DNA of 64,000 bases. It comes from Malacoraja senta. Its lineage: Eukaryota. Below the pieces are notes generated by a model. It saw only the letters and a program-made list of their open reading frames with translations, was not told the origin of the DNA and did not search any database. Positions 3,138 to 55,903 of the stretch are shown here, piece after piece; within the stretch, counting starts at the first letter, position 1, and each line of letters begins with the position of its first letter. The position numbers were made by a program, and so were the translations under genes. The stretch lies in NCBI GenBank assembly GCA_038087875.1, contig JAXLNO010002571.1:62001-126000 (forward strand). The letters run 5' to 3'.

Positions 3138-3412
3138 GTCACCACAAAGGGATGCGACACAGTTGAGATGACATTAAGGAGAAATGCGCTCGGCCAGCTT
3201 GGTTTTCATGTCAACTATGAAGGGATTGTGGCCGACGTTGAACCCTATGGCTATGCCTGGCAAGCAGGGCTGCGGCAGGGGAGCCGACTAGTGGAGATCT
3301 GCAAAGTTGCTGTGGCTACTCTAACCCATGAACAAATGATTGATCTATTGCGAACATCTGTAACTGTTAAAGTTATCATCATTCCACCCCATGAAGATAG
3401 CACTCCACGCAG
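3138..3412 (+). CDS. SIPA1L1: SIPA1L1 internal exon encoding the PDZ domain ([29 protein letters not shown]...[11 protein letters not shown])
   Basis: Translation is near-identical to the SIPA1L1 PDZ domain as recalled ([53 protein letters not shown]). Acceptor ttttctccctttcag|, donor AG|gtatgt. 275 nt, phase 0 to 2. Confidence 0.96.
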
Positions 3413-4407
3413 GTATGTTCGGTGAGGCCAGCCTGCCACTCTAATCAGACTAATCACTCACTTTGCAGAGTCCAACTGGTCAGCAGCTAATCATTCATCG
3501 TGATGGATGCACTGTTATAACATTTGATTCGCACATTTTGTTAATAAGGATATTCCCATTGCCAACCCATTTCCCATTAGAAGAGAAAGGAACAGAATGA
3601 AAGCCTGACTGGGGATATGAGAGGATGAATGGATTTCTGTTATGATCATGGTATATTATTAAAAAATATTATTTAATAAGTACAAAACATATCACACCAA
3701 CATTTATGATGTTTGAATGCTGATTTTCCCAATATTAATTTATTGGTACAAATCTTTAACTTGCATGATTTTCTTTTGCTGAAGTTGCATGTCTTGATGA
3801 GAGATTTGGGATGGCATAGTGGTTATTCTAGTAAAGCTGCTGCCTCACAGCTCCAGTGACCCAGTTACTCCCTTCTGGTTGGTAAGTCAATTGGTCATTA
3901 TAAATTGCCCCCAATGTGGGGGTGAGTGACAGAATCTGGAGGTAGTTAAGAGAAATACGAGGATTAGTGTAAATGGATGCTTGATGGTTCGTGTGGACTT
4001 GGTAGGTCAAAGGGCTTGTTTTTGTGCTGATTGACTATGACTTTATTGACATTATTCTTAACATTGTTGTTCTTCTTGCCACCTCAGAGACTATGTGCTT
4101 TCATTTATTACTGACTTGTTTCCAATCTTTGGAAATGTTTTTCAGTCTGATTTTTCAGTCTGGACAGTTACATTACAATAGTTAATGGGATTATATTAGG
4201 ACACTGTATGGAAGTACATGTGTCTTTTTACAATACTGCACACAAAAATGTGACAAATGGGGTCAAATTTCAAAATTCCTTCATAAAAGTTGACAAGCAC
4301 TTTATTGGGTTCATGACTAACATAGTATCAACAACAAATATAAGAAAAGACAGCAAATTGATGGCAAGTTTCTGAAAATGGCAGCAGAATACACAAATAC
4401 ATTTTGT

Positions 4408-4992
4408 GTAACGGTTGTTGCGTGGTGTCCACCACGGTTGTCACAGTAAGTACACATTTCTTATTCCTTTCTATGTTTATGAATGCCACATGGAACAATA
4501 AAATTGCAAACACTGTTTCCACTTCATTCACCTGATCATTTAGTAGAATACTGCTTCCATCTGAGTGGACACCACAACGCGCGTTACACAAACGTTCGTT
4601 GCGGTGGACACTAAAAGGTTTGGTGTCCCAGAAAACGAACGTTACATTATGAGCGAGAACCAAGCATTTTCACCAATGCGATCTAAATGGTACATTACCT
4701 TATGGATTTGAGCTATCGATTTTTTTTAATTGATTTTAAAAAGTCGGAAAATATATCGTAAACGGTCGTTACCTTTTTGACACCACGATGTTTTTGATAT
4801 ATTAAATTGGAAAATAAGAAAAAATAAATAACTCACCCAAAGAACGCTACTACCATAGGATACCTCGTTGGGTGTTTGAAAAGCATTAGAGGTTTGGAGC
4901 CTCCGTGGTTTTACTTCCGGACGTACCGATCCCTATAATGGTCATTGTGACAATGGACACCAAGCACAACAACCGTTACGGGATCTTTACTG
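4408..4992. mobile_element. MITE remnant, Tc1/mariner-like right end
   Basis: gtaacggttgttgcgtggtgtcca...ttgtcaca (4408) is inverted relative to tgtgacaatggacaccaagcacaacaaccgttac (ends 4979). The right end is ...ctttactg|ta; the matching left terminus is not seen. Confidence 0.65.
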
Positions 4993-5775
4993 TACTGTAT
5001 TACCTTTATGTTACTGTATTTTTCTCCTAGTATAGATGAAGATATTTCCCTAGATCATTATCAAAACGCATATGTATGAGGGGCCATATAAAGTTTATTT
5101 ATTAATTAAATATTCATGACTAAATGTGGCAGAGTTGTTAATGTCACACTTTTGATGTCCACAATGGTGGGATAACGATGAAATTTGTTATGAAAAAAGT
5201 TTTTGACTTTCGGACTTGAAGTTATCTAACCTATATCTGCTATTTATAAGGTTTCACATGATGGGTAGATTTTTGTTAAGAACAGTGTATTGGTGTATAA
5301 AAGTGAATACTAATCTTGTTCGTCAAAAACTCTCCAGTATTGTAAAAAGACACAAATGGGATTAGTATAGATGGGTACATGATGATGATTAGCTGTAACA
5401 TGATGGGCCATATGTTGTATGATTCTCTGAATGGTTTATGCCTTGGAAGCAGAAGGATTGCTACCCTTTAATTTAATCCGATGCTGAAAACATGCCACCT
5501 GCATCATCAGTTGACTTGCCCATGTCTGAATGTTGATTAATTAGTTTGTCTTCTTTGGACAACAGCTCGCACATTGTTCTGCTTTCCAGTTGAGAAAGGT
5601 ACAAAGTCCCAAAAAATCTCAAACTGGAATCTCTTAAAGGCTACCTGTACAGATGCACTCGTTAACAGGGACATACCCAAGTTATAGCTAGATCAATTTG
5701 CTTTCCAAAGGAATTACTTTTGTTCACTCAGAAACCATGGAAGCTATAAAAATGAATTATTCATCTGAATAATAA

Positions 5776-12963: not shown

Positions 12964-13236
12964 GGGCTGTTCTGAGATGTACCGCATGCCCGTAATGGAA
13001 TACAAAGTAAACAATGAAGGGATTCCATACGAGTTTAAATTGCCATTCAGAAATAGCAATAAGTGGCAGCGGGGCATTCCGCCATCCCATAGTACAGTTC
13101 AACTGCAATCGCAAACACAAAGCCAAGCTGCAAACAGGATGATATCTGCATCGGGCAGCAGGGCCCAGCCACAAGAGCGCAACTCAGCCATGCCACGCAG
13201 TGCTTCTAGTGATGGACGTTCATTGGACACTAAGAG
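12964..13236 (+). CDS. SIPA1L1: SIPA1L1 internal exon after the PDZ domain ([36 protein letters not shown]...SSDGRSLDTK)
   Basis: Matches recalled SIPA1L1 [35 protein letters not shown]. Acceptor tgttttttag|, donor AG|gtttga. 273 nt, phase 2 to 2, continues the frame of the previous exon. Confidence 0.94.
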
Positions 13237-14557: not shown

Positions 14558-14687
14558 CTGAAGAAGGGTCTCGACCCGAAACGTCACCCATTCCTTCTCT
14601 CCAGAGATGCTGCCTGTCCCACTAAGTTACTCCAGCATGTTGTGTCTATCTTCGATTTAAACCAGCATCTGCAGTTCTTTCCTACAC
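14558..14687 (+). mobile_element. Short Penelope pLTR-derived element beginning with a minimal hammerhead ribozyme core
   Basis: ctgaagaagggtctcgacccgaaacgtc followed by the same tail as the PLE at 62575. Flanked by a 14-bp near-identical direct repeat (14545-14558 / 14686-14699). Confidence 0.85.
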
Positions 14688-21062: not shown

Positions 21063-21218
21063 GTTGATATCTTCAATGGACAGTCCTTACGTCTCCGCAG
21101 CATCGGTGTCTATTGGACGAAACCAGCATAGCCGCAATTCTCCCAGCAATCTGTCTTCTTCCAGTGATGCAGGATCCGGTGGTGGCAGTCATCGAAGGCA
21201 GAAGTCCATCCCTGATGG
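21063..21218 (+). CDS. SIPA1L1: SIPA1L1 internal exon (LISSMDSPYV...[29 protein letters not shown])
   Basis: Matches recalled [28 protein letters not shown]. Acceptor ctcctgcag|, donor GG|gtatgt. 156 nt, phase 2 to 2. Confidence 0.93.
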
Positions 21219-36622: not shown

Positions 36623-36741
36623 AGCCAACCTGGCACATTCCATCGGTGTCGAAGGTAACATCTGCACTCAGAGATAGCCCCAGCGGGAGGTTGGTGAGAC
36701 AGGAAGTCGTGGACCATGTTTCTCCCGTCAAACATGGACAG
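36623..36741 (+). CDS. SIPA1L1: SIPA1L1 internal exon (EPTWHIPSVSKVTSALRDSPSGRLVRQEVVDHVSPVKHGQ)
   Basis: Matches recalled [39 protein letters not shown]. Acceptor atctttcag|, donor CAG|gtaaac. 119 nt, phase 1 to 0. Confidence 0.9.
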
Positions 36742-37394
36742 GTAAACAAGTTAAAACCTATTATATGCCAGCGTTACATCTGCTCCAGCATACTAGGAGT
36801 GATCTTCAACCCTTCACACCCTACCCCCTTCCCTCACCACTCTCCTCCTCAGCCTTGTTAATGATCTTTATGAGTGGAATAAAGTGTGAGCACTTGCCAT
36901 ATTTATAGCTGACTTGCAACTCTCAACAGATGTGAAATTACTGAAAGCTTTACTGTGGTTTTCAGGTTAACATGTTCATTTTGACATTTGACATTACATT
37001 AAACTTGCCAAACAGCTTCTTTGGAGTTCTTGAAATTGAACATTTGGTTCCGTATAACTTATAAATCTCAGTGCGCCAAACACTTGTGTGTTTTTACTGC
37101 TGGTCCTCACCACTAACATAATTTGCGTTACTGCTGAGCCAGAAACCTCTGCTCAGATTCTGCCACATTCTTCGTCATGCCATTACGTTTAGTGGGGAGA
37201 GAGAAACGCTGAGAGGGGAAATGCACATAGTTGGAAAATACCGTATGGAGATACATTTCCCTTTGGAAGAAAGGCGAGAGGGGGAAACAAAGCTGAAGGA
37301 CAGAATTTCAAAGACCAGCTTATCATAAAGAGGGTAGCAGTAGTTGGGAAATGGTCATCTCAAAGAATTTGAAACTGTGGACTAGGTCACACCT

Positions 37395-37706
37395 AGGGTG
37401 GCACAGTGGCACAATGTTAGAGTTGCTGCCTTACAGCGCCAGGTGCCCGGTTCAATCCTGATGATGGGTGCTGTCTATATGGAGTTTGTACATTCTCCCC
37501 GTTACCATATAAGATTTCTCCAGGTGCTCTTGTTTCCTCCCACACTCCAAAGACGTACAGGTTTGTAGGTTAATTGGCTTCTTAAAAAAAAAAAATGTCC
37601 CTAGTGTGTAGGATAGTGTTAGTGTACGTGGATCGCTGATCTGCGTGGACATGGTGGGCCAAATGGCCTGTTTGTGCAGTGTATCTCTAAACTCAAATAA
37701 ACTAAA
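37395..37706 (+). mobile_element. tRNA-derived SINE (HE1/V-SINE-like)
   Basis: ggtggcacagtggcaca...cccggttcaatcctga...ctccaaagacgtacaggtttgtaggttaattggc...gtatctctaaact. Confidence 0.85.
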
Positions 37707-38074
37707 CACACAGCTGGAAGATTGAAATCCATAAAGTGCGAAGAGAAAAAAAACACACCATTTTCAAACATTGCTTACAAAGTTCACAGATCTTCAATAT
37801 TACAAAAGAGTTGAGGAAAACCAGAGGAATGTAAAGACACATGAGGCATAATTCCCATAAATGGGGTAAAAATGTAAATGGGTTAGGATGCTCTTCGCTG
37901 GATTAAATACATTGAAGTTATACATGTTATTGCTTTCAGATTTTGTCTCACCTTCCCTCTTTCTATCCCATCCCAATAAAATGCATGGCATGAAGAAAGC
38001 TGGGCAGCTACATTTTCTTTGCACACATCAGCAGCACAGAATGTTGTGTGTGAAAGATACACCTTCTAGATGCG

Positions 38075-38560
38075 CTGGGACGCATCCTCATTGATGTGAC
38101 CTGGGGTCATCGGGTGTTTCGGGTCTCACAACATCAGACACCCTCGCCCAGGCGACCCAGCCGGGGTTGATCAGGCCCCGACTTGCGTCCCAGCAGCAAC
38201 CGCCCACGGATCAGCCCTCTTAATCCAAAACCACCTAGTGGCTTTCTCTGCGGCTTCGCTTGCGGATTGAATGGCCCTCTTCTTTGCCAGCCCCGTAATG
38301 CCCAACTGGTTGAGGACTTTGCAGAGTGAGCATCCTGCAAAGCCTCTACAGCCCACCTCTATGGGCTCATAGTATGCCTTCCATAAGCTGTCCTGGCACA
38401 TCTCCACCAGTTCCTGGTACTTTGCGCGTTTCCTCTCATTAGCCTCTTCAATACGCTCTTCCCAGGACACTGTCAGCTCCAGAATGATCAGCTGTTTCGT
38501 CACTTCAGAGGTGGTGATCATGTCTGGCTGGAGTGATGTGCTGTGGAAATTTCAGCTGTT
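38075..38560 (-). mobile_element. HERO-like LINE 3' end with a restriction-like endonuclease (RLE)
   Basis: PDMITTSEVTKQLIILELTVSWEERIEEANERKRAKYQEL...PIEVGCRGF is the PD-(D/E)xK RLE motif typical of HERO-clade elements, followed by a short 3' UTR. Confidence 0.85.
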
Positions 38561-38899
38561 TGAGAAATGTTCAAGTGTTTGAGAATTGAAGTGAAGGCTT
38601 TTACTGAGTCATCCTCCATTGCTTGTACTGCTCAATAAAAATGGATGTTTTCACATGGCAAGATAGCAATCATGAATCAGTTATTATTAGTACTTCTTTG
38701 AGGCAAGTTACTTCCAGAACATTTGCTTATCACATTGACTTTGTTTAAACTTGTGTCACAATCCAGTATTGCTCACAAAGTAATGACTCAACAAAACCAT
38801 TCTGAGGCTCCAAGTTCAATGTTCAACACAGAGCATCCCACAATGTTACCTTGTATGGAAACCACTGTGCTTGAGGCTTATTGACTTATTGATCAGTTA

Positions 38900-39283
38900 A
38901 CCCCACCTGATACCCAAAGCAGAATGGATTATCTTTGGAATAACGGAAGATGGTCCAGAACTAAATGTGTTTCAAAAGAAACTAATAGACTATGGGTTAA
39001 TAACTGGAAAAAAGCTAATTCTAAAATTTTGGAAGAAGGCTCCAATACCAACTATAAACATGTGGATTTCAAATATGTTCGAAACATTACACCTAGAAGA
39101 GATAAGACTCCTCCTTGCAGGTAAACCAGACCACTTCCACCTGACGTGGTCTGCATTTATAGAATTATTACAAACATAGGGTGCAAAAGTACTTTAAAAA
39201 AAATTGAGGTCAGGTAAGGGGGGATGATAGTTGAAGAGTTGGTATGTCCCATTTGCTTAATGCTCATAAAAAATATTTGTTTC
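38900..39283 (+). mobile_element. L1/Tx1-type LINE ORF2 C-terminal fragment running towards the gap
   Basis: LIDYGLITGKKLILKFWKKAPIPTINMWISNMFETLHLEEIR resembles the C-terminus of fish L1-clade ORF2. Confidence 0.65.
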
Positions 39284-39483
39284 NNNNNNNNNNNNNNNNN
39301 NNNNNNNNNNNNNNNNNNNNNNNNNNNNNNNNNNNNNNNNNNNNNNNNNNNNNNNNNNNNNNNNNNNNNNNNNNNNNNNNNNNNNNNNNNNNNNNNNNNN
39401 NNNNNNNNNNNNNNNNNNNNNNNNNNNNNNNNNNNNNNNNNNNNNNNNNNNNNNNNNNNNNNNNNNNNNNNNNNNNNNNNNNN
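39284..39483. other. Assembly gap (200 N scaffold join)
   Basis: Exactly 200 Ns. Gene orientation switches across it. Confidence 0.99.
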
Positions 39484-41031
39484 TGGCTGGCGGAAGAGGG
39501 AGGCGGTGGCGAGGAGTTCCCAACGGCCAAGGCAGCGGGGCGATGTTGTCCGAGGAGCGCTGACCTTCCTTCCTCCCCCCCTCCCCCTCTCTCTCTTGTA
39601 CGCCCCCTCCACCCCCCCCCCTTATCCTGGGACCCCTCCACTCCATCCCGCACTGATCCCCATTCCCGCCTCTATTCAGTCCTCACTGGCATCCCCTGTG
39701 CTCCCCTCCCCATCTACCCCCCCCATCTATTCATCCTGCGCTGATCACCCTATCCACCTCGCATTGATTCTCCTGCCACCCCCCCCCCCCCATCCATCCT
39801 ACACTGGTTCCCCAATTCACCCTGTACTTACCCCTTTCCCGTCCATCCTGTACTAATCCACGCATTCATCCCGTACTGACCCACCCTCCATTTACCCTGC
39901 ACCTTCCCCTCATTCATCCTGTAGTGATCCCCCATTCATCCTGCACAGACCATCCGATCCACACTGTACTGACCCCCCCCATTCATCCTGCGCTGATCTC
40001 CCCCCTCCCCCATCCATCCTGTACTGATCCTCCCATTCAAGAAGAATGGAGGGTCTCGACCCGAAACATTGCCTATTTCCTTCGCTCCATAGATGCTGCC
40101 TCACCCGCTGAGTTTCTCCAGCACTTTTGTCTACCCTCATCCATCCCGTACTGAACCCCCCCATTCAACACCACTGACATCCCCGGTGCTCTCCCCTCAC
40201 AATTTTACCTACTCCAACCAACACGTACTAATTCACCTGCCTCCATCCATCCATTCTGCACCGACTGCCTTCTAACCTCCCCCCCCCCCACCCCCGCCAT
40301 CTATCCACCCCGCACTGATTCACACACACCCCCCTCCCTGACCCTATTGTGCTGGAAATGACTTCAGAGCAAACATTGACTATGTTTGATAACGGAATGC
40401 AATCAAATGTGTTTTAATTCCCAATGTTATTATTTGTTTTAATCCATAAAGATGGATTAATTAAATTGTGAACACGTGAAACATTAAAACCGCAGTGTTC
40501 GATTGTGACTGCTGCCGTTGACACGTTATTACAGAATTCATTTTAACGACAAATCAATGCTCTTAATATGGAGTATCAGTACTCTAGTTATTTAATGAGC
40601 AACATTCACAACTATACGTACGCATATATGTTACCATGGTCCAGGATTTATTGACACAGGTTGATCATACGCTGAATAATCCAACCACATTTTTGTTTGG
40701 AAGTGGAAAGAACTAATAGAAATTGCATTAATTGCAATGTGTAAAAAGAGTTGAGATACTGTCTTATAATTTTGCTGCATGTCATTGTGGGATATATCAT
40801 GTCTTGATTGGTGAATATGTTTAGTTTGTGACTTTATTTGAAGCAGAAATAATATGTGAATGCTTCATTGAGTATAATTCCGACTGGTAACTACGCACTT
40901 CGTCCGAGCACATTATCGCACGCGTCATGCAAGCCGTCTTAAATGACCACCTAAACTGTCATTTGGCAACCTAAAATGCTGCCAAGGTTGCCCGGCTGGC
41001 AACAGGGGAAAAAAGTTAAGCGAGAGCCCTG
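39484..41031. mobile_element. hAT-like element (one end only) with a C-rich minisatellite and an embedded Penelope pLTR piece (~40040-40137)
   Basis: Ends gttaagcgagagccctg, a CAGGG-type TIR. Repeated cattcatcctgcactgatcccc-like units at ~39640-40330. The other terminus is not seen and is presumably lost in the gap. Confidence 0.55.
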
Positions 41032-41304
41032 CTCCCTGTGTGTGTGCGTGTCCGTGTGTGTCTCCCTGTGTGTGTGTGTACGAGTCTGTGTGTGTCTCCC
41101 TGTGTGTGTGTGCGTGTCTCGGCGTGTGTGTCTCCCAGTGTGTGTGCGTGTCTCTGCATGTGTGTGCGTGTCCGTGTGTGTGTGTGTGTCTCCGTTTGTG
41201 TGTGTCTCCCTGTGTGTGTGTGTGTGTGTGTGTGTCTGTGTGTGTGTCTCCCTGTGTGTCTGTGTGTGTCTGTCTCCCTATGTGTGTGTGTCTGTCTCCC
41301 TGTG

Positions 41305-41336
<32 letters not shown>

Positions 41337-41450
41337 TGTGTGTGTGTGTGTGTGTCTGTCTGTCTCCCTCCCTGTGTGTGTCTGTCTCCCTGTGTGTGTG
41401 TGTGTGTGTGTGTGTGTCTTCCTTTGTGTATGTGTCTCCCTGTGTGTCTG
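41032..41450. repeat. Compound (TG)n/(TGCG)n microsatellite with ctccctg interruptions
   Basis: Directly visible; it produces the Cys/Val-rich pseudo-ORFs. Confidence 0.97.
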
Positions 41451-41471
41451 TAGTCACATCCTGGCCTTAGA

Positions 41472-43475
41472 CAGGGCTGCCAACCCTCACGCTTTGAGCG
41501 TGAGAGTCACGCATTTCAGGCAATTCTCACGCTGATGACAGAATTCTCACTCTGTCTTCAGTTCCTGCACAGTTAGTCTCTTTGCGCTACATCACAGCGA
41601 TCTGTGCAGTCTGGGGAAGCGCGTCAGTTGGCGGCTGTGAGTGACGTCGCATCTCTTCTCTTCTGTTCTTTCTTGGTTGGATGTGCAGCCGCTGACTACA
41701 TGAACTAAGCAGGTGAATCGGTTGTAAAACATGGGGGGAATACCACAATGAGGCCAAACATCTAGGACAGGGTTCGGCAATCTACGGCACACGGGCTGAA
41801 TCCGGCCCATAACCCGAAAAAACGCGGGGGGTTTTCAATTCGTTTTCGCGGAGTCGGGGCAGGTGAGCCGACCTGAGAACTGCAGCCAGTCCCTGGGACG
41901 TGAGCTAATCTGAGAACGGCAGCCAGTCCCTGGGCACGCAGAATGCCAACTTGATCATTATGGACAAATTGGGCCACCCATGTACATGTTGTATAACTCT
42001 GACTATGCAGATCTGAATGGGCTTAGAATTACCATTTAATCAAAATTGCCCCCACTTTCCCCATTTTGATTCTTGAGATTAATATCCCTTTGCTCTGTTA
42101 AAGCGATAAAGTACTTATGAGGTAGAGTCAGGGAAGGGAACATGTTATTTTTTTTTTAGTTTGATTTAATTTGTTAGTTGATTGTTTGTTGACTGCCATA
42201 ATGGTCTTAAAGTAACTTAACTGTTATAAAACAGAAATAAGTGATTTTTGTCCAAACAATTGGAACTTGCATAAAATGTTTGCATTATTAGCAGGTCTGC
42301 CAACTCTCACGCATTGACCGTAAGACTCACGCATTTCACAAAATTCTCACGCTCTCACGCTGATCACAAAATTATATAATGAGAATAGGACATGTATTGC
42401 TTAACAAATAGTGTAGGAAGGAATTGCAGATGCTGGTTTAAACTGAAGATAGACACTAAAAACTAGAAAAACTCAGCAGGACAGGCAGCATCTCTGGGGA
42501 GAAAGAATGGGTGATGTTTTGGGTCGAGACCTTCAGCCTGAAGAGGTTGAAAACCAGCCATAAAACACAATGACTGGACATGTGTGTTATCCAACTAAGG
42601 GCAGAAATCAGAATCATGTGTTCATCTTTATTCACGTGACACCATAATAAATATATTACAGAAAAAAACAATTTAATGGGGTGGCACGGTGGTGCAGCGG
42701 TAGAGTTGCTGCCTTACTACCACATGGGTTTTCTCTGGATATTCCGGTTTCTCCCATATCCGAAAGAAGTGCAGGTTTGTAGGTTAATTGGCTTCTGTAA
42801 ATTGTCCCTGGCGTGATGGATGGAATTGGTGTATGATAGATTGCTGGTCGGTGCGGACTTGGTGGGCTGAACGGCCTGTTTCCATATATATTTTTACATA
42901 TATATCTTAATTTCATTGAACTATATATGATTGAATATGTGGCATTATTTTTGTCTTGTTTCTATATTCAAAGGGTAAGGTTGATTGATTTATTTGTGCA
43001 GAACAGTGATGGAAGTCCGACTTTTGCTTTGTTTCTCTGTATTTTTCTCTATATATATGCATAACAGCATGAATATAATCTGATTTCCATACATGAATAT
43101 AATCATTCATGTGCTGCACCTGTTGATCAGAGCCTGGCTCTACTGTGGAATGTAATTAGGAATGTAATTTAGCCTAACCTTATTCATACCTAACCCAATT
43201 TAAAGCATAAATGTTGCATTCAAGTGTAAGTTAAAAGACTCACTACAGTATGCACCAGATTGCACAATTTCAAGCTGAAAAATGCAAAAATTCCCAACAA
43301 AAGCTGCATTTTTCAGCTTGAAATTGTGCAATCTGTTGGACTTCCGCAAAAGTTGGACTTCCATCACTGTTCTGCACAAATTAGGGAACACCCCCTCCCA
43401 CACCCTCCCCCCCTCAGTCGCTACGTTCCTTCGCAATTTCTCACTCTCAACTCTCACCCAATGTTGGCAGCCCTG
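41472..43475. mobile_element. hAT-like non-autonomous element with nested SINE and Penelope pieces
   Basis: Left TIR cagggctgccaac (41472), a second left-end copy caggtctgccaactctcacgc (42292), and right TIR gttggcagccctg (ends 43475). No 8-bp TSD found. Confidence 0.65.
42678..42885 (+). mobile_element. Internally deleted tRNA-derived SINE (HE1/V-SINE-like)
   Basis: Head ggtggcacggtggtgcagcggtagagttgctgccttac is joined directly to the core; 3' end ggcctgtttcca. Confidence 0.75.
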
Positions 43476-44754
43476 CAACATGCACTTTGTCTAATGTAGA
43501 AATGAGGAACTGTCGATGCTTACAAAGCTGTCGATGGTTTACAAAAAAAAGACACAAAGTGCACGAGTAACTGGGCGGGTCAGGGAGCGTCGGTTGCTAC
43601 TTGATCTGCTAAGTTTACTCCAGCACTTTGTGTCTTCATTTACTTTGCCTACTTAATTAAATTTTGCTCCTTCTGGCTAACATTCTGCGTTTTGGACGCT
43701 GAGATTTATCTGTATACCACCAACATCTCACACAACTGTAATTAAACTTTTCAATCTGTTATTTTATTTCCTTAAAGAAAGGAACAAATGTATAGTTTCA
43801 TTGATTGAACCCGATTCACAGTAAAGATGACCCTTTTTACTGTTCACGCTACCAGAAATCTAACTCCACTCTCACAATCTCATTCTCAATGAACTGCTAT
43901 AGTCACAATAACGTACTGTCCCAGACTTCTAGGAGGACTTTTAATGTACTCATGTTGGGACAAAATCACAATGGCTTAAGGTTCTTGGTCAGGAAGTTGT
44001 AGGCTGTAACACAAGATGACAACATGGGCATATGTGCTTGCAGTGTTTCCTCAAGGTAAGCTTATTTCACATGTATCACAATAAACAGTTGCCAGATTTA
44101 AAACTGGACCTTTCCTACCGGGAATATGGGAATCTTGGATAATGTATAATGTAACAGAATGAAAGGTTTGTACAGTTATTAAATCAGTTGTGCAACATCA
44201 AACAAATCACTCTGACAATGTTACTGTTCTATCGTTTTAAATATGTAGATGGATGTGCATGAACTCAAGATAAAGAGACAGACGAGCAATGTATGATTTG
44301 ATTAAAATGTCAACATTGCTCGAATAACAACCAAAGAATAATCATCTTTATTCCCCGTCTGCTCTTCTCATCACTTTGCTCATTTAGTTTCAAGGACAGG
44401 AGCAAAATGCTTAAAATTTAATATGGTTCTGAAATAACTTTGAATGTGATGGAGAATAACAAGAATGAAGGAATTACTAAGTAATCAAGAGCTTGAGTAT
44501 GAAGGATTTAGTACTCTTGTGTCTGCATATCTCAGGAATTGAAACTTTTAAACAAAATCAGTTTAGAAAAAACTGTGACAGTGAGGATGCTGTTGTGTCT
44601 TGGGAAGAAAACATGGGGCTGTGGGTGCCAGATGAAGAACAAGATAAGAAAATGCAGGGTTTTGCAGTTTGGCAGGAAGAACTAAAATGCAGAATGTTAG
44701 ATAATGGAGAAAGACTACAAAATACTGCTGTGCAGAGCAATTTGTGTTCTCATT

Positions 44755-45950
44755 TTTGAAGAAGTAACCAAGGAGATTGATGTAGGCATGGCCATAGACA
44801 TTGTCTATATGGTCTTCAGCAAGGCCTTTGATAAGGTTCTGCATGGCAGGCTGCTCTGGAAGGTTAGATTGCATGGAATCCATGGAAACCTAACTAGATA
44901 CAGAAATGTCTTCATTGTCAGGAACAGAGGGCTGTGGTGGAGGGAGTTTTACGGACTGGTCTGTTACGAGTGGTGCATCGCAGCGATCGGTTCTGGGCTC
45001 ATTGCTGTTTGTCATCCATATGAACAATTTGGATGAGAATGTACAAGGCATGATCAATATATCAATATGCTTGCTGATCACACTAAAGCAGATGGTGTCA
45101 TTGACAGGGAAGGAGGCTATCAAGAATGACAGCAGGATCTTGTTCAGCTGGGCAAGTGGGTCGAGGTATAGCTAAAGGAGTTTAATGCTGATAAGTGTGA
45201 GGTGTTACATTTTGGGAAGTCAACCAAGGAGAAACAAATGGTAGGGCACTGGGGAGCATTGTTGAACAGAGGGACTTTTAGGCATACAAGTACATAATTC
45301 CCTTAAATAGAATCCTGGTATATAGGGTGGTTGGTGAAGGTGGTTTTTGGCATATTGGCCTTCATGAGCCAGGAAATTGATTACAGAAGTTGGGACATAA
45401 TGTTCGAGTTGAACAAGACAGTTATTGTGTTCAGTTTTAATCACCTTGCTGTAGGAAGGATAGTTAAGGTAGAAAGCATACAGAAAAAAATTACGAGGAT
45501 GTTATCGGGACTTGAGGGCTTAAGCTATAGGGAGAGGTTGGACAGGCTAGAACTTTATTCCTTGCAGCACTTGAGGTCGCTTGGTGATCTTATATATAAA
45601 ATCATGAGGGAAATACGGTGAATGCACAGTGTTTTTTCCAGGGTAGAGATATCAAGAACTAACATGCATAGGTTTAAGGTGAGAGTGACAAGATTTAAAA
45701 GGAACTTGAGGGACAACTTTTTTCACACAGAGGGTGGTGGGTATATGGAACAAGCTGCCAGAATTAGTTGTTGAGGAAAGTACAATAACAATATTTAAAA
45801 GACATTTGGGCAGGTACATGGATATTAAAGTTTTAGAGGGATCGGGGCCAAATATGAGCAAATGGGTTTAGCTTGGGTGGTGCATCTTGGTTTGCATGGC
45901 AGATTTGAGCCGAAGTGCTTGTTTCTGTGCTGCATCACTCAATGCCTCTA
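44755..45950 (+). mobile_element. CR1 LINE reverse-transcriptase and 3' fragment
   Basis: DIVYMVFSKAFDKVLHGRLLWK, VTSGASQRSVLGSLLFVIHMNNLD and GLEGLSYRERLDRLELYSL, with frameshifts. Older CR1 remnants continue to ~46560. Confidence 0.9.
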
Positions 45951-48900
45951 AATGCAAAGTTAACACGCAGGCACAACAAGTAACAAGGAAAACTAGTTAA
46001 ATGCTAACCATATTGCAAAGGTAGCACAAAAGCACAAAAGACTTTGCCCAAATTCTGAGGACTGCAGTGAGACTACAGTTGGTAAATTGTACATCATTTT
46101 GATCTCTTTATTTATGGAGGGATGTATTTGCATTGGAAGCAATTTAGAGATATTTTATTACGTAGATTCCAATGATTAATAGGGCAATCTCATAAGAAAC
46201 AAGTTAATATGTGGTGCCTATTCATCATTAGCATTTGGAAGAAAGAGTGATCTTAAGTAAGGTTTTAAGGGGGTTGACAAGGTAGAAACTGAGGGATGCT
46301 TCACCCTTGGAGATAAATTGAGAACTGAGGCATACCTTCAGGAAAAGGAATCACCAATATAATAAGATGAGGAGGATCTTCTCAAAGAAAATTATGGATC
46401 TTTAAAATACTACCTACAAAATAGTGGACTGAATCATTGAATATATTCACGGATAAGGTGAGTCATGGGTTATGGGGAATGGGCAGGAAAGTTGAGCCAA
46501 GGTCAAGATCAGATCAGCCATTATCTTATTTAATGGTGATGATGCCTTTTAATTTTTTGTTCTGCAGGACACATTTGAATGGAATCTCGGGCCATGGTAA
46601 TTACATGCGTGGTACAAGGGTCATTGATCATTGCATGTCTCATGATTGAAATAGAAGATATTTTCTTCTAATATTTTAATTCTTCAAAACAGTGGGAATG
46701 CACATTTCGGAAAGGGCAGGCTTTCACATATTTCGTTTCTTGACCTCTGTGAAGTATGTTTCCATTTACAGTGGGTAGATTGCATCAGAAAACATTTTTT
46801 ATTGTTCCACATGATGGTTCAATACGCAGGTTTACGAACAAGTAAGAGCCACGTAGACCAATGCAAACAAGTAACATTTTCAATTGATTGTATTTTCAAT
46901 TGATTGTATTCAGCCAAACCCGTACGAAATTTGACCAAAGAATCCAAGTCTGAAGTAGGGTGCACTCAAGAGATCCTACAAATGCCTCGAGTGGATGCAA
47001 AATATGCCAAGGCATACTTTTAAAGACCCAGGTGTTCCCCCAGGGTTCTGACCAACCTTCATCCATCAATTAATTTAATGATTAATTTTGTCATTAAAAC
47101 ATTGCTATATTTGAGACATTGCTGAGCATAAAATAACTGCCATGTTTTGTTTCACATTACTTCTATAAAATGTATTCATTCTTGTAAGACATTGGCTGTG
47201 CGATGCTTTAGGTTATTCTGAGGCTGTAAAACTGTTTCACTATGTGCAACCTCTTACTTTTACTAAATTACAGAGTGTAACATGGAAAACCAAATGAGAG
47301 CTGTACACATAGCTGCTTTGAATTTGTAGTGAGCAGGAAATATCAGATGGCCACTCTGACATTTATTTTCCCTTTTATCAAAGTGACTAGCAACCTAGTA
47401 TCTTCCATTGGGCATCGGAGACACAACTGTAATAGCAAGCTCACTAACAAAATAATCAAATTTCAGAAATCTCAAACACAAACCAAAGCAATAAAAATAA
47501 GATTTTTAAGACTATTTTAATTAAATATACAGGAACCGTGGAATATGCATGTTAAATGTTTTAAATAAAATAATGATTTTAATTTAGAAATTCATTCTTA
47601 TTATGAGGAAACGGACCTTCAAATGTATAAATTAGATATTTTTGAGATCTGAGGTCAGCAATTATGACAGTGGATTATTAAAATCGTTCATCAGGGGGTT
47701 GTCAGTTTGAATGGATTTTAAACAAAGAACAGAATGTATAAAGTTGGAGGCACACCTATCAACTACATCTATTTTGCTGCATCCTGGAACTCCAAATTCC
47801 AATTCCTCACTTCAAAGCACGTTTGGGACATTTCAAACCATTTCAGCACAAAGCTGCATAAAATTTCTAAACTGTCCTCAATGTTTAGGAATACTGAAAA
47901 ATGTAACATGTATGATACATTATAGTTCCAGGATTTTAATGCAACAATGGCACTTTGTATTGGAATAGATTGAAATGACACCAACGTACGTGGGAATGGA
48001 GTGGAAGTGGAATTCCAGGATGGAGCAAATTTTTAATGCAATCATATATGGTATTAATTATAGATCAGATACTTGGGGACAGCAGTGTTAGCCGCTGCCG
48101 AGTTGTTAGCATTTCTCCGGGAACAAAAATTCTGATTTTTTTTTTGTGCTTTGCATCCAAAAGTAATCTCTTTTTCCAGATTGAAATGCCATTTTTAGAT
48201 CTATTTGCACCACTTTATATTTGGTCAGTTACTTTCAATTTAATGCACCCTTACACACCCAACTTGATTTTTCCACCATTCATGCAAGAGATGGATTCAT
48301 TCCTTGTGCAGTGTTCTTTTGAGCACCGCAGGGGAACTTAGATCATTCTGAAGAGCGACAATAAATGGGTGCTTCCTGCAACCAAGGTTTCACAAAGGAA
48401 AATCCCAAAGGTATCTTTGACATTTCATGCTCCTCTAGAAACATAGAAACATAGAAAGTAGGTGCGAGAGTAGACCACCAGGCCCATCGAGCCCGCACCG
48501 CCATTCGCTCATGGCTGAACACTAAACAGACACCCTTACCCACAAACAGTAGACACAAGACACAGAACACAAGACACTACCCTCCCCTTTATATCGCTAT
48601 CACCCCTCTCCACCCCAAGAACCGCGTTTCTTACTCACCTGTTTCCACACAGCATTGCCATCTTCCGATCTTGCTCACTGGCACAAACCCACTGGTTTGA
48701 TTCTGGTCACCTGCACCCCACAACAATCTACCCAATTTCTCACCTACATCATGCCCTGAACCTTGACTTCAACCACCTCCCCACCCACCTCAAGATGAAC
48801 TCCACCTCTGTCCCAGGTACCACATTTTCTATCACAAAAATATTTTAATGCCCTTTCAACTGTGTTATGGCCTTGGGCATGCTCTGTTGCATTTCTAGAA

Positions 48901-48957
48901 AAGTTGTCTAACAACACATGAATAGATGAAATCACAAAATCAGAACCCTGAACCACT

Positions 48958-49235
48958 TATAGAGTCATAGAGTGATACAGTGTGAAAACAGTCCCTTCTG
49001 CCCAATTTGCCCACACCAGCCAACATGTCCCAGCTACACCAGTCCCACCTGCCAGCATTTGGTCCATATCCCTCAAACCTGTCCTATCCATGTACCTGTC
49101 TAACTGCTTCTTATAAGTTGGGATAGTCCTTGCCCCAACTACCTCCTCTGGCAGCTCGTTCCATACACCCACCACCCTTTGTGTGAAAAAGTTACTCCTC
49201 AGATTCCTATTAAATCTTTTACCCTTCACCTTAAA
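48958..49235 (-). mobile_element. CR1 3' end
   Basis: FKVKGKRFNRNLRSNFFTQRVVGVWNELPEEVV...YKKQLDRYMDR, and tail ctgtatcactctatgactcta. Confidence 0.9.
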
Positions 49236-49442
49236 ATCTGGGGAATATCGCAGACATCCCGTCAATGACAACTCCCTCTTGAATCAGTCACATTGGTAAT
49301 TCAGTATCCCAACTGGTCCATTTCAAGATTTAATTGTTTTGTGTATGAAAATTTTGATATTTTCTCAATTTTCCTTTGATCATTTCAAATATCTGTCATT
49401 ATCATTTCTTATTTTTAGTGCTGCATCAATGAGCGTACTATC

Positions 49443-49572
49443 CTGAAGAAGGGTCTCGACCTGAAACGTCACCTATTCCTTTGCTCCATAGATGTTGCCA
49501 CACCCGCTGAGTTTCTCCAGCATTTTTGTCTGCCTTTGATTTTACCAGCATCTGCAGTTCTTTCTTAAACAT
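49443..49572 (+). mobile_element. Short Penelope pLTR-derived element beginning with a minimal hammerhead ribozyme core
   Basis: ctgaagaagggtctcgacctgaaacgtc followed by acctattcctttgctccatagatg...catctgcagttctttcttaaac. Confidence 0.85.
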
Positions 49573-50362
49573 AAATACTTTCCTTTATCACCTTTTATGC
49601 AGTCTGACTCCTCACGTGGATACTGTCCCAGAAATAATTTAAGCTACTGAATGTTTTAGGATATTTAATAAATATTTCAGAAATATATTGTAAGGGTGTG
49701 GTAATAGCAGAAATTAATAAGTGTAAATGATTTTAGGCATGAAATGCCCTCCTGTGCTGAAGTAACTTTGACTTGACACTGTTGCAGACCTAACACAAAT
49801 TTGCTGCGAGTACTATTGCCGCCAGTACACACCTAACTGGCTGCCATCCAACTAATGCTTAATGAGTCTGAAACCATACAGATGCCTATATCATGTCTCA
49901 TCCAAATCGTGTTCAAACATCATTTCTGAACTTAATGACCTGTACAATCCAGACTAAAAAACAAATTGTAACAGAACAATCAGCATTATTCTCTGCACTT
50001 CTTTCCAAAAATGTCTGCCTCCTTAAAACCCTGCTAAAGACTCAGCCACATTAAAAAAAATGATTCTCAATTGGTAGCACTAAACATGCTTCATCGTACC
50101 AGCAGCATTGTACTCTGCCTCTGAAATTCATTTCCATTGAATTCAATGGAATTAACTTGAGATAAACTCAACATGCTGCTCCACATTTAGTGCAGGCAAT
50201 TGAAGATGTTTTTTTAAACAATACTTTCATACACGCCTTTGGCTAACCCCACAGCTCGCTCATTCTCATCATACTTTGCCAGTCTCTCTTGTATTCAATG
50301 GTGAAGCACGATGTAATGTTTTCCGAAACATTAAAAAGGGTGCTACATAAATTGAAGTTGAT

Positions 50363-50566
50363 CATAAGGTCATAAGTAATAAGAGTAGAATGAGGCCATC
50401 CGGCCCATCAAGTCTACTCCGTCATTCAATCATGGTTGATCTATTTCTCCCTCGTAACCCCATTCTCCTGCCATCTCCCTATAACCCCTGACACCCGTAC
50501 TAATAAAGAATCTATCTATCTCTGTTTAAAAAAATATCCTTTGACGTGGCCTCCACATCCTTCTGT
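50363..50566 (-). mobile_element. CR1 3' end (short)
   Basis: cataaggtcataagt...gaggccatccggcccatcaagtctactccgtcattcaatcatgg is the reverse complement of a CR1 tail. Confidence 0.75.
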
Positions 50567-50644
50567 GCTTTAGTGTTATATGAATAACTTAAAAGAGGCA
50601 CATAAATTATACCCTGATCGAGCTCGGTAGGTAAAGACAAACAG

Positions 50645-50950
50645 AGGTGGCACTGTGGCGCAGCAGTAGAGTTGCTGCTATAGAGCCAGAAACTCATGTT
50701 CGATCCTGACTATGGGTACTGTCTGTACGGAGTTTGCATGTTATCTCTGTGACTGCTTGGGTGTTCTCTGCGTGCTCCAGTTTCCTCCCACATTCCAAAG
50801 ACCCGCAGGTTTGTAGGTTAATTGGCTTCTGTAAATTGTCCCTAATGTGTAGGATAGAACTAATGTATAGGGTGATTGTTGGTCGATGTGGACTCGGTGG
50901 GCTGAGCGGCCCGTTTCCACACTGTATCTCTAAACTAAACTAAAGTAAAG
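50645..50950 (+). mobile_element. tRNA-derived SINE (HE1/V-SINE-like)
   Basis: Full head, core and tail ending ctgtatctctaaactaaactaaagtaaag. More degenerate copies lie at ~2680-2840 (-), 3808-4040, 33555-33875 and 56180-56490. Confidence 0.85.
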
Positions 50951-51274
50951 CATCAACTACCCAAGAAGAGAATAGATAACGACATTGAAAGGCCTTTCTT
51001 TAAAGAAAGTGTTTTGTGACAAATATGATTTTAGTGCTATATGAATTAAAGATTTTTGTCTTTAGATTTATTGAATCAAAATTAGAAACAGGATTAAATA
51101 ATGTGAAGCCCAGCATTATATTGCAGCCTCCAAAATGTACCAACTGATGGTTTCTTAAAGTTTCAATTACTTCAACACAGGCTAAAAGATAACATTAAAA
51201 ATGTTTTGTAATGCGGTAGTAGAATTTAACTTCACAGATAATCTGAATACATTAGTGTAGGTGTAGCTGCTGCT

Positions 51275-53114
51275 GCTGGCGCCGACATTGGCTGCCACAG
51301 TGTGCTGCTCCTTGCTGTTTTGTATGTGTTTCTTCGTTTATGTCGTCTGTGAAAACCCTACAAAGATTACTTTCACGGGAGAGGTACTCAAACAGACATA
51401 CAGTACCTCCAAACATCGTTCCGGATTTCTCTCACTCGCTGGATTATTTGGATATACTCGTCGGCGGGGCTGTGGCTGCGTTCAAGGTCTTGAGACGGAG
51501 GAGGACCCGTGGGAAGTGCTTTGGAGCACTCACCCGACTCCGGCGACGAGGATCACGCACACCGATCCCAAGCATATTCCTGGCAAACGTACGTTCTCTC
51601 AATAACAAAGTGGACGAACTGCAACTCCTGCGCCGGACAAACAAGGACTTCTCCTGAGCCGCTGCCCTATGCTTGACCGAGACCTGGCTGTGTGAGTCGA
51701 CCCCGGACAGCACGCTGCAACTGGCTGGCTTCCAGCTTCACAGAGCGGACCACAGGAGGCAGTGGGGAAATCAAGAGGCAGTGGAATATGCTTCTATACC
51801 AACCAGGACTGGTACAGCGACATCATAGTACTGTCAAAGTTCTGCTCTCCCAACCTAGAATCCTTCTTTATAAACTGCAAACCCCTGCTGGACGCTCTGC
51901 GGGCCAATAGATCTGTGGATGACGTAGTCAACCTGGGCCTGCACTTCATACTCTAGCACCTAGACCGCCAGGGGACCTATGCGAGGATTTTGTTTGTTGA
52001 TTTTAGCTCTGCATTCAACGCCATTGTGCCAGAGCTACTACACTCCAAACTTTTTGAGTTGGCTGTGCCTGAACCCCTTTGTCGGTGGATCCATCAGCTT
52101 CCTGACAGACAGGAAGTAGCATGTGAGGCTGGGAAAGCACATCTCGGACCCGCACACCCTCAGCATAGGAGCACAGCAAGGCTGCGTACTCTCCCTCTCC
52201 TCTACTCTCTCTACACCAATGACTGCACCTCCACTGACTCCTCTGTCAAGCTTCTCAAGTTTGCGGACGACATAACCCTGATTGGACTGATCCAGGATGG
52301 GGAGGAATCTGCCTACAGACAGGAAGTGACACAGCTGGAGTCCTGGTGCCATCGCAACAATGTGGAGCTCAATGCTCTTAAGACAGTGGAATTGATAGTA
52401 GACTTTAGGAATGCTCCCCCTCCGCTCACGCCACTCACCATCAGCAACACCACAGTCACATCCATGGAGTATTTTACGTTCCTGGGAACCATCAGCTCCA
52501 AGGACCTTAAGTGGGGGGCTACCATCGACTCCACAGTCAAAAAGGCACAACATCTGAGGAAGCACAATCTGCCACAGGCAATGATGGTCCAATTCTACAC
52601 GGCCATCGTAGAGTCTGTCCTCACCTTCTCCATCATGGTCTGGTTTGGCTCAGCCACCGAGCACAACATCCGGAGGCTGCAGTGAATCGTTCGATCAACT
52701 GAGAAGGTTATTGGCTGCAACCTTCTCTCCGTTGACGAACTGTACACTGCAAGGGCCAGGAAGCGAGCGGGTAAGATCATCTCTGACTCCTCTCACCCAG
52801 ACCACAAACTCGTTGAATCACTTCCCTCTGGAAGGCGACTCCGGACTGTCAAAGCTGCCACAGCCAGACATAAAAAAGCTTTTTTCCACGAGTAGTAGCT
52901 CTACTCAATAACCAAAAATCTGTAGCCTCCTTTTGCTCTGGTATTTTATTTGTTTCACATGTTTCATCAATAATGTTTTATTATTAATGTTTAATGTTTT
53001 ATGTATCATCCCTAACTGTCACTGTATGTCATGCTGTCATTTGCGGGCGGAGCACCAAGGCAAATTCGTGTATGTGAATACTTGGCCAATAAACTTATTC
53101 ATTCATTCATTCAT
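51275..53114 (+). mobile_element. Rex1/Babar LINE, internally deleted (EN start fused to RT end)
   Basis: EN motifs PSIFLANVRSLNNKVDEL and CLTETWL. RT motifs FVDFSSAFNAI, PLLYSLYTNDC and LLKFADDITLIGLI. Tail aataaacttattcattcattcattca. Stops and frameshifts present; deletion junction near 51885. Confidence 0.92.
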
Positions 53115-54130
53115 AAAAGCAAATGTGATTTATTGCTAAGAGTACCAAATGATGCTAATAATTGTGTCGACTCTGCAAAAGCTTGCATAAATCTTCCACA
53201 GGAAATCTTCTAAACACTTCATAGATAATTTATCAGAGAGAATAGGTCTTGTATAAGCTAAGAAAATTGATTTTGGTTTCTCAGGGATAGAAAATTAATG
53301 AGTGCATTCATTTCTGCCACAGCACATTTCATCTGCATCTGTCTAAAGCTCGGGTACAAGGGGACGATACTCTGGTAAATCTAGAATCTGGAGAGGCTAT
53401 TTAAATGAAGAAACTTGTAGAATTTGAAACAACTTTTAAATCAGGAGCCTGCAATAGCTTTGATGGAATCTAACATTAAAGCACATGTGCATTCTGCTAT
53501 TTAACGTAGCTTTGCCTTCAGAAATAGACAAGAAAAGTCCGATGCCCAGAGTATAACAACTTCCATGATCAAAATACTTTTAACCATACAAAAACACATT
53601 AAGGAACCTAATGGGCATAGCATCGAAAAAATCTTGACCCCAGCTACATGATTTTAGGACAATAACCAAACATACAGTCAATGTAGGTTTTAAGGAAATT
53701 TTTCTTCTTTTCAGAGACAAAGGGAAATTGGAAGATGAGGTTTAAGGAGTGAGTTTCAATATTCACAACCTTTGTCGTTGGAGTCATGACCACAATGGAA
53801 CAGAGAATGAGCAAGAGGACAGTGTTAAAAGTTCAGGGAGTTTATAGGGAGTGAGTAAGTGCTGTATCTTCTCTAAACTAAAATTGACATTTTCCAATGG
53901 ATTGTGTAATTTACAATCATAACAGTATTTTGTTCCAAATACATGCTAAACCAGATTTTTTTTCCCAGCTATATTTTAAAACTCTCCTCTTCAGACACAC
54001 AAAATATGTTTGGTCTAAATCTACCATGCAACCCGGACAACCTTTTTAACAAAATGTCTCAGCAACCAGTGTCCTGGTTTTCAGGAAAATAATTTCCAAA
54101 AGTAAAGACGCAATGAAACAGAAACTTTAC

Positions 54131-55652
54131 CTTTCTGGTGGAGGTACTTCCGGTAGTAGTAAGCTCCGAGGTCCACATGCTCTACTATATATCGCTTCAC
54201 TTTGTCAGAATGCACAGCCAAGTTTTCCTTTGCTACCTCCAACACTGCCACTCCTGCATTTGTACAGTGCGAGCTCAAGGAAAGTTCAAAGGAGTTGTTT
54301 TCAGATCCGCACAGTGACCCAGAGTTCGACCGGGAGAGGCTAACCTTGCGCTCTCCTTCTCCGCCAATCTCATTCCGGAAGTACGAACAACTTAGCACAA
54401 GTTCATTGCTTTTCTCATCCCCATAGTCTACATTGAGATTCTCTTTTGAGTTCAGGTCTTCTGTGCTTCCTGCAGGAGAGCTGAAGCTGATCGAATGTGC
54501 AAGCGGACCAGCAGACAACGAAGCAGCAGCAGCCGCTGAGGCACCTGTTGTGGTGTTCCTTCTCTTAATAACACTATGCCTGGTCATCGCGGCTTCATTC
54601 AAGTCAAAGAGCACGCTCTGCACATCGTAATGGGCAAAGCATTTTTGGCCAGCCCAGCTCCTCATACTGTCCTCTGATTTGCTGTCCTCGAAGTCTGCCG
54701 ACTTGCCCAACTCACTCTCACCTTTGGCATTGCGCAACTTGCGGAAAATGGAAGAGTCTCCCGTTTCGGATTTTGACCTCCTCTTAAGCGGTTTCTCTCT
54801 TTCTTTGTGCAGTGGCCTGGGACTCCCTCTGTGTGCAAAGAAACCATCAACCGAGTCGTGTTTGGCACTGTCCATGCTGGAACCATAAGCTTTATTAGCT
54901 TCTGCCTTTAATAGCTCGCTGAGTTGCTCTGGTGCTGGGCTGCGTTGATCTGTCTGATCATTTCTATAACCCTTTAATAAATCAAAAAAACTATCTCCTG
55001 ACATACCATGCTTGTCAATGGAGGAAGTGCTACCATACTCACGATGAATAGCAGCTCCCATTTTGTGACTCATAGCTCCATACTCTTCTCCTCCGTCCAC
55101 ATCCAGCTCACTGATCGTGATATCACTATTGCTCCGCTGCCTTATTCTGCGAAGGTTCTTTGCAGGGGACTGGAGGTAACCATCAGGTGTAAGAAACCTA
55201 GAATCCAAGTTCTCCATTTCTTGTGCCTTGCATGGTCTATAATCACTGTGCACCCTCTTCGAGGACAAAGACTCCAGTGAATTTTGATTACTTTGGCACA
55301 ACCTATTGCTTGGGCTACTGGAGTGGATAGACATCACCGTGCCCTCAGGACTGCCTGCAGATTCCTGATCACTTGTTCTGCAAGAGTCCTTCCCCATATC
55401 CTTCCTGGGAGGCCAATCTGCAATTCTTGCTCGAACACCCATTTTAGGCACATTTGGTGTTGCCCCGACATGGTGAGCGCTTTCACTTCGTGGTGGCCCC
55501 GTTGAATTCGCAGAACCAAAAGTGCCATTGGGCGTTCGGAATCGCCGTGTATAGAAGTCATCTGAGCGCGAGCCTATCGTTAGTTCAGGCCCAAAAACTG
55601 AAGTGGCGCTGATGCCCACCCTTTCAGTCTGGGAACGTTTTAAACTGGTCAT
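54131..55652 (-). CDS. SIPA1L1: SIPA1L1 first coding exon (N-terminal 507 codons plus 1 nt)
   Basis: ATG at 55652 starts [11 protein letters not shown]. Contains [50 protein letters not shown] and [12 protein letters not shown], all typical of SIPA1L1. Donor AAAG|gtaaag at 54131/54130 (phase 1). The ORF-track start at 55733 is a TTG. Confidence 0.96.
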
Positions 55653-55903
55653 ACTCCACATTGGTTTCTCACAACAGCTTTCACTAAATGCACGACCATT
55701 TCTTTCATCAAGTACAAATCTCCACGAGAACAACTTCCAAGCAAGTTCAGATGAAAGTTAATAATAATTATTTGTAGAATAATTTTCAAAAATACACATG
55801 TTTGAGCTGATCGTGATCTGTAAAGCTTCTCTCTGATGATCCATGTAGCATTTTCATAATACGGATTTCACAGATTATTTAACTACCGTGGCTTGAAGAA
55901 AAT
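55653..55903 (-). other. SIPA1L1: 5'-UTR part of the SIPA1L1 first coding exon, with splice acceptor at 55905/55904
   Basis: The minus strand reads ttaaccaatgcatttttttctcttttacccccag|attttc: branch point-like ttaac, a polypyrimidine tract and AG, 251 nt upstream of the ATG. Confidence 0.8.

What the first reader, a model, noticed from the sequence alone, without database searches (positions are those of the whole stretch)
3138..55903. SIPA1L1 is split into oppositely oriented parts across the 200-N gap
Seen: the mid-gene exons (PDZ onward) are on +, left of the gap. The first coding exon is on -, right of the gap, and transcribes towards it. Neither the exon expected after 54131 (EHWNYFG..., leading into the GAP domain) nor the exons expected after 36741 (SSHSSSNTLSS... 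and the coiled coil) were found in the window. The gap is flanked by repeats on both sides. Inference: the left contig is inverted by scaffolding. This predicts GAP exons on + upstream of the window and C-terminal exons on - beyond a second gap. Less likely alternatives are a true gene-breaking inversion or two convergent partial copies.
Basis: partly seen in the sequence, partly recalled or inferred. Interest (0 to 1): 0.7.

Follow-up and report, generated by a model that had tools for sequence, protein, structure and literature searches.

The report
Skate SIPA1L1 split by scaffold join
Two intact, non-overlapping parts of a skate's single SIPA1L1 gene face each other across an unsequenced scaffold gap, which is most likely an ordering or orientation error of the assembly and not a broken gene.

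Summary
The window comes from a skate (family Rajidae). It holds the first coding exon of SIPA1L1 on the minus strand (55652 to 54131). It also holds five mid-gene exons on the plus strand (3138-3412, 12964-13236, 21063-21218, 29812-29939, 36623-36741). The only N run (39284-39483) lies between the two groups.

All exons have canonical splice sites. The five plus-strand exons splice into 317 residues, 315 of them identical to little skate SIPA1L1 residues 950-1266. Exon 1 is 97.8% identical to the same protein.

Neither the RapGAP exons nor the C-terminal exons are in the window. The two contigs share only dispersed repeats. Both parts look constrained: exon 1 has dN/dS 0.12, and the window's lineage shows no excess of changes. 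Little skate and thorny skate have one SIPA1L1 protein model each that covers both parts.

The strand switch falls exactly at the scaffold join, inside introns 12 and 1, with repeats on both sides. A scaffolding artefact is therefore the best reading (about 0.8). A real inversion is not excluded (about 0.1).

The scan noted similar splits at 200-N gaps elsewhere in this genome (NUP153 and others). Those notes are unchecked.

The parts
54131..55652 (-). SIPA1L1 first coding exon (coding part): ATG at 55652, phase-1 donor after 54131. It encodes residues 1-507.
   Evidence: ORF. Donor AAAG|GTAAAG. 496/507 identical to L. erinacea SIPA1L1. 62-64% identical to tetrapod SIPA1L1 against 42-45% to SIPA1L2.
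39484..54130 (-). Partial intron 1, 14.6 kb, running from exon 1 to the gap. It holds no exon 2. It carries a LINE reverse-transcriptase fragment and copies of a short SINE-like element.
   Evidence: No tblastn hit to the GAP exons. RVT_1 hit at 51990-52685. Repeats.
39284..39483 (.). 200-N scaffold gap, the only one in the window. It joins intron 12 (sense +) to intron 1 (sense -).
36742..39283 (+). Partial intron 12, 2.5 kb, from exon E12 to the gap. It holds repeats and no exon E13.
   Evidence: The same intron is 2.65 kb in Callorhinchus.
36623..36741 (+). Exon E12, ending ...SPVKHGQ.
   Evidence: Acceptor TTTCAG|, donor CAG|GTAAAC. Spliced match.
29812..29939 (+). Exon E11.
   Evidence: Acceptor CTTCAG|, donor CAG|GTTAGT. 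Spliced match.
21063..21218 (+). Exon E10.
   Evidence: Acceptor CTGCAG|, donor ATGG|GTATGT. Spliced match.
12964..13236 (+). Exon E9.
   Evidence: Acceptor TTTTAG|, donor AGAG|GTTTGA. Spliced match.
3138..3412 (+). Exon E8, which encodes the PDZ domain.
   Evidence: Pfam PDZ PF00595, E 1.1e-6. Acceptor CCTTTCAG|, donor CAG|GTATGT. Spliced match.
1..3137 (+). Partial intron 7, upstream of the PDZ exon. It holds no GAP exon.

Best explanation
The window shows one ordinary, intact SIPA1L1 gene of a skate whose pieces lie on two contigs. A scaffolder joined these contigs with a placeholder gap of 200 N in the wrong relative orientation, and perhaps in the wrong order.

The left contig ends inside intron 12. 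The right contig ends inside intron 1. So the join puts exons E8-E12 (plus strand) face to face with exon 1 (minus strand).

Two simple errors would give this picture:
(a) The left contig, carrying E2-E12, is flipped in place. It puts E13-E20 on the minus strand to the left.
(b) The right contig, carrying exon 1, was swapped with the left one and flipped. This puts E13-E20 on the plus strand to the right.

Shown here: the exon map, the orthology of both parts, the constraint on both parts, and the strand switch falling at the gap. Inferred: that the join is wrong, and which contig is at fault.
For: 1. Both parts belong to the same single gene. Exon 1 is 97.8% identical, and spliced E8-E12 99.4% identical, to L. 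erinacea SIPA1L1. Identity to Amblyraja radiata SIPA1L1 is 96.8% and 99.1%. Each of those skates has a protein model of 1702-1705 aa that covers both parts, and the search table lists one contig for each model.

2. The parts are complementary (residues 1-507 and 950-1266) and do not overlap. The two contigs share only short dispersed repeats of 65-92% identity, so there is no inverted duplication.

3. Nothing looks decayed. All ten splice sites that bound these exons and that lie within the window are canonical, and there are no frame breaks.

4. Both parts are constrained. Against a genomic contig of the little skate, the exon 1 coding sequence is 98.3% identical while its flanks are 94.5-94.9% identical, and dN/dS is 0.12.

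5. The window's lineage shows no excess of changes. With sawfish as outgroup, changes unique to the window's lineage number 3 in exon 1 and 0 in E8-E12. The other two skates show 1 and 4, and 1 and 2.

6. The strand switch falls exactly at the only scaffold gap, which is flanked by repeats.

7. In Callorhinchus intron 12 is 2.65 kb and intron 1 is 11.3 kb. The window's contigs stop 2.5 kb into intron 12 and 14.6 kb into intron 1. So the next exons are expected at or just beyond the contig ends.

8. Hi-C scaffolders are known to flip contigs, most often short ones (PMC6719893, read; PMC9848053, read).

9. Leads only: unchecked scan notes describe similar splits at 200-N gaps in this genome (s1-179757, s1-203363, s1-207042).
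Against: - No read-level, Hi-C or optical-map data could be examined.
- The sizes of the two contigs are unknown: at least 39.3 kb and at least 24.5 kb. If both are megabase-sized, a flip by the scaffolder is less likely.
- Nothing outside the window could be read, so no prediction about E2-E7 or E13-E20 was tested.
- A recent or heterozygous real inversion would leave exactly the same intact, constrained exons.
Confidence: 0.8

Rival explanations
1. There is a real chromosomal inversion in this skate, fixed or heterozygous in the sequenced animal. Its breakpoints lie in SIPA1L1 introns 1 and 12, and the breakpoint repeats caused the assembly gap.
For: The in-window layout is what such an inversion would give. 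Repeats flank the gap, and inversions often arise between repeats.
Against: It would break a strongly conserved gene, yet both parts keep canonical splice sites. Exon 1 has dN/dS 0.12, and the window's lineage shows no excess of changes. In two other skates a single protein model covers both parts. The flanks of the gap are not inverted copies of each other. A breakpoint falling exactly on a placeholder gap is more simply a scaffolding join.
Confidence: 0.1
2. The window holds two partial copies of SIPA1L1, fragments of a segmental duplication, lying tail to tail. The intact gene lies elsewhere.
For: Only parts of the gene are visible on each side of the gap. Other notes in this genome describe inverted duplicates at gaps (unchecked).
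Against: The parts do not overlap and share no unique sequence. The exon 1 flanks diverge from the little skate by 5.1-5.5%, close to the synonymous divergence of 5.6%, as expected for the orthologous locus. Fragments with no function would not show 315/317 identity and intact splice sites unless they were very young.
Confidence: 0.05
3. The artefact is more complex. For example, a contig from elsewhere, or a haplotig, was inserted at this place, so that no single flip or swap restores the gene.
For: Nothing outside the window was seen. The scan noted candidate inverted haplotigs at 200-N gaps in this genome (s1-207042, unchecked).
Against: Both contigs carry parts of the same gene, which argues that they are true neighbours.
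Confidence: 0.05

Closest known systems
SIPA1L1 (SPAR / E6TP1) of other cartilaginous fishes: Leucoraja erinacea XP_055496813.1, Amblyraja radiata XP_032882708.1, Pristis pectinata and Callorhinchus milii
   Same: The exon boundaries match the 20 coding exons of Callorhinchus. Exon 1 is 97.8% and E8-E12 99.4% identical to the little skate protein. A PDZ domain is present.
   Different: In the window the parts lie on opposite strands across a gap. Exons E2-E7 (RapGAP) and E13-E20 (SPAR_C) are outside the window. In Callorhinchus all coding exons are collinear within 60.6 kb on one strand. In Pristis the gene occupies one range of 121.8 kb on one strand.
Contig misorientation ('inversion') errors of Hi-C scaffolding
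   Same: The strand switch falls exactly at a scaffold gap of fixed placeholder length, within repeat-rich introns. Published benchmarks list inversions as a common scaffolding error, commonest for short contigs (PMC6719893; PMC9848053).
   Different: The scaffolding method, the contig sizes and the contact map of this assembly are not known to me. That 200 N is the default join of some Hi-C scaffolders is my own recollection and was not verified here.

Membership tests
SIPA1L1 orthologue | The N-terminal exon typical of SIPA1L proteins is closer to SIPA1L1 than to SIPA1L2 or SIPA1L3. | tested here: met
   62-64% identical to mammalian and bird SIPA1L1 fragments against 42-45% to SIPA1L2. 97.8% identical to little skate SIPA1L1.
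SIPA1L1 orthologue | A PDZ domain lies downstream of the RapGAP domain. | tested here: met
   PF00595, E 1.1e-6, 29.4 bits against a cut-off of 23.2, on the exon at 3138-3412.
SIPA1L1 orthologue | Rap_GAP domain (PF02145) and Rap-GAP_dimer (PF21022). | tested here: inconclusive
   No match in the window. These exons are expected outside the window, which cannot be read.
SIPA1L1 orthologue | C-terminal SPAR_C domain (PF11881). | tested here: inconclusive
   No match in the window. It is expected beyond the contig end.
Scaffolding orientation or order error | The change of strand coincides with a scaffold gap. | tested here: met
   The only N run is 39284-39483. All + exons lie to its left and the - exon lies to its right.
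Scaffolding orientation or order error | The sequence on both sides is single-copy, intact and belongs to one locus. | tested here: met
Scaffolding orientation or order error | Flipping or swapping one contig restores a collinear gene. | not testable with these tools
   This needs the scaffold outside the window. Look-ups of the two skate isoforms found no gene on record.
Scaffolding orientation or order error | Long reads or Hi-C contacts contradict the join. | not testable with these tools
   No read data are available.

The most novel reading that the evidence does not exclude
The layout is real. In that case this skate, or one of the two haplotypes of the sequenced animal, carries an inversion of the E2-E12 block of SIPA1L1. 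That would knock out, or radically rewire, a conserved neuronal Rap-GAP scaffold gene.
Probability: 0.08. Interest if true: 0.45.

Novelty: not a real feature. Interest (0 to 1): 0.1.

Why it matters
The value is mainly practical. Gene annotation of this scaffold will yield truncated or split SIPA1L1 models, and any call of an inversion at this place would probably be false. The locus gives curators a clean, gene-based marker for a join to re-examine. If the unchecked similar notes in this genome hold up (NUP153 and others), small flipped contigs may be a recurring fault of this assembly. If the layout were real, it would be a natural disruption of a conserved synaptic Rap-GAP gene, but the evidence here points the other way.

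Tried and rejected
- I looked for the gene's layout in the two closest skates. The isoforms I had (XP_055496813.1, XP_032882709.1, XP_032882708.1) are not the products on record.
- The sawfish gene gave only its range, 121.8 kb, and no DNA.
- I looked for scan notes on neighbouring windows.
- I searched for conserved non-coding blocks shared with Callorhinchus that could place the gap flanks within introns 1 and 12. Only exons, one block next to E10 and copies of the short SINE-like element aligned.
- I tested for an inverted duplication across the gap and rejected it: the two sides share only dispersed repeats.
- I rejected a processed pseudogene for exon 1. The donor site and about 1 kb of intron, and 1.3 kb of 5' flank, align with the little skate genomic contig at neutral divergence.
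- A profile search meant to find this genome's own gene models listed only the top 120 full-length proteins, none of them from this genome.
- The source species was not identified. Raja brachyura sRajBra1.1 (YaHS-scaffolded, 2,269 gaps, PMC11358690) is only a candidate.
Full report
**What is in the window.** The window has a single run of N, 39284-39483, 200 bases long. It therefore consists of a left contig of at least 39,283 bases and a right contig of at least 24,517 bases.

The longest ORF of the window lies on the minus strand at 54081-55733. From the ATG at 55652 to the donor AAAG|GTAAAG after 54131 it encodes 507 residues. A search of the 1.84-billion-protein representative library found SIPA1L-family proteins, the best at E 4e-133. 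The word-indexed search showed 62-64% identity to mammalian and bird SIPA1L1 fragments against 42-45% to SIPA1L2.

**Species context.** A profile search recovered annotated SIPA1L1 of two skates and of other cartilaginous fishes. These were Leucoraja erinacea XP_055496813.1, Amblyraja radiata XP_032882708.1 and XP_032882709.1, Pristis, Hemitrygon, Hypanus, Mobula, Rhincodon and Callorhinchus (accessions).

Exon 1 of the window is 496/507 identical to the little skate and 491/507 to the thorny skate. The window is therefore from a third, closely related skate. An earlier scan note also calls this a skate genome. The exact species was not identified.

**Exon map of the left contig.** tblastn with these proteins, refined by splice-site search, gives five plus-strand exons: 3138-3412, 12964-13236, 21063-21218, 29812-29939 and 36623-36741. 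All are bounded by AG and GT. The first carries the PDZ domain (PF00595).

Spliced together they read 317 residues without a stop. Of these, 315 are identical to little skate residues 950-1266.

I mapped the Callorhinchus protein onto its own 60.6-kb gene (L003). That gene has 20 coding exons, and the window's exons correspond to its exons 8 to 12 and exon 1.

The missing parts have no match better than E = 1.3 anywhere in the window, on either strand. They are little skate residues 505-949 (exons 2-7, RapGAP) and residues 1267-1702 (exons 13-20).

**The gap itself.** As the scan's program asked, I first tested continuity. The gap lies in intron sequence on both sides: intron 12 read on +, intron 1 read on -. 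The 'ORFs' across it are runs of X. The flanks do not resemble each other. Nothing suggests that the letters are continuous.

Repeats flank the gap on both sides.
- **Left side:**
  - a dispersed repeat at 37397-37706;
  - an unidentified 116-aa ORF at 38171-38521, which has no Pfam match and whose transposon-like look is only my impression.
- **Right side:**
  - a C-rich degenerate 23-bp tandem array at 39784-40005;
  - a copy of a short SINE-like element at 40050-40139;
  - (TG)n at 41037-41417.

**One gene or two copies.** The two parts are complementary and do not overlap. The contigs share only short dispersed repeats of 65-92% identity. This excludes an inverted duplication within the window.

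The Logan genomic contig L001 encodes an exon 1 identical to the little skate RefSeq protein. It aligns with window 53097-57011 along its whole length. The coding part is 98.3% identical, the 5' flank 94.9% and the intron flank 94.5%. dS is 0.056, dN is 0.0068 and dN/dS is 0.12. This is the orthologous locus, with its intron, and not a processed copy.

With the sawfish as outgroup, amino-acid changes unique to the window's lineage number 3 in exon 1 and 0 in exons 8-12. The little skate shows 1 and 1, and the thorny skate 4 and 2. Neither part shows relaxed constraint.

**Why an artefact is the best reading.**
- A highly conserved, intact and constrained gene changes strand exactly at the one scaffold join of the window.
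- In two sister species a single protein model covers both parts.
- The contig ends fall where introns are expected to continue. In Callorhinchus intron 12 is 2.65 kb and intron 1 is 11.3 kb. Here the contigs stop 2.5 kb and 14.6 kb into them. The four skate introns that can be measured are 0.94 to 3.5 times the Callorhinchus lengths.
- Published benchmarks state that inversions are a common error of Hi-C scaffolding, commonest for short contigs (PMC6719893). [quoted passage not shown]

That a fixed 200-N gap marks a proximity-ligation join is my own recollection and was not verified.

Other first-stage notes in this genome describe NUP153 and other loci split or mirrored at 200-N gaps (s1-179757, s1-203363, s1-207042). 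I treat them as unchecked leads.

**What remains open.** Two equally simple errors fit the window.
- (a) The left contig, which would carry E2-E12, is flipped in place.
- (b) The exon 1 contig was swapped with its neighbour and flipped.

They differ in where exons 13-20 lie. That cannot be read from here. Look-ups of the skate isoforms found no gene on record, and the sawfish gene was too long to fetch.

A real inversion with breakpoints in introns 1 and 12 would look the same inside the window. I give it about 0.1, because it would have to be very recent or heterozygous to leave both parts so clean. I give partial duplicate copies about 0.05.

**Verdict.** The interpretation as a scaffolding error is supported in general, but not in its specific form. 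There is no new biology here. The finding is useful mainly as a flag for assembly curation and gene annotation.

Noticed in passing
window 21219-21425 (+): A block of about 200 nt directly downstream of SIPA1L1 exon E10 is conserved between skate and Callorhinchus (L003 52306-52525). The alignment, which includes 19 exon bases, has 83% mean column identity. Reading through the donor meets a stop codon at once, so the block is non-coding. It may be a splicing-regulatory element.
   Followed up: partly
window 14557-14689, 17606-17691, 19654-19767, 40050-40139, 42406-42531, 49443-49572, 58901-58996, 62574-62704: A SINE-like element of about 130 bp occurs in at least eight copies of 82-92% identity, on both strands. 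It also matches Callorhinchus L003 78071-78160. It is the element that note s1-191480 describes as Penelope-derived with a hammerhead core. I did not test the ribozyme claim.
   Followed up: partly
window 51990-52685 (+) and 62865-63686 (-): There is a LINE reverse-transcriptase fragment (RVT_1, E 8.6e-7) inside intron 1. Upstream of exon 1 there is an ORF with a weak, below-cut-off GIY-YIG match that may be Penelope-like.
   Followed up: no
window 39784-40005 and 41037-41417: A C-rich degenerate 23-bp tandem array and a 380-bp (TG)n microsatellite lie just right of the gap. Such sequence could explain why the contig broke here.
   Followed up: no
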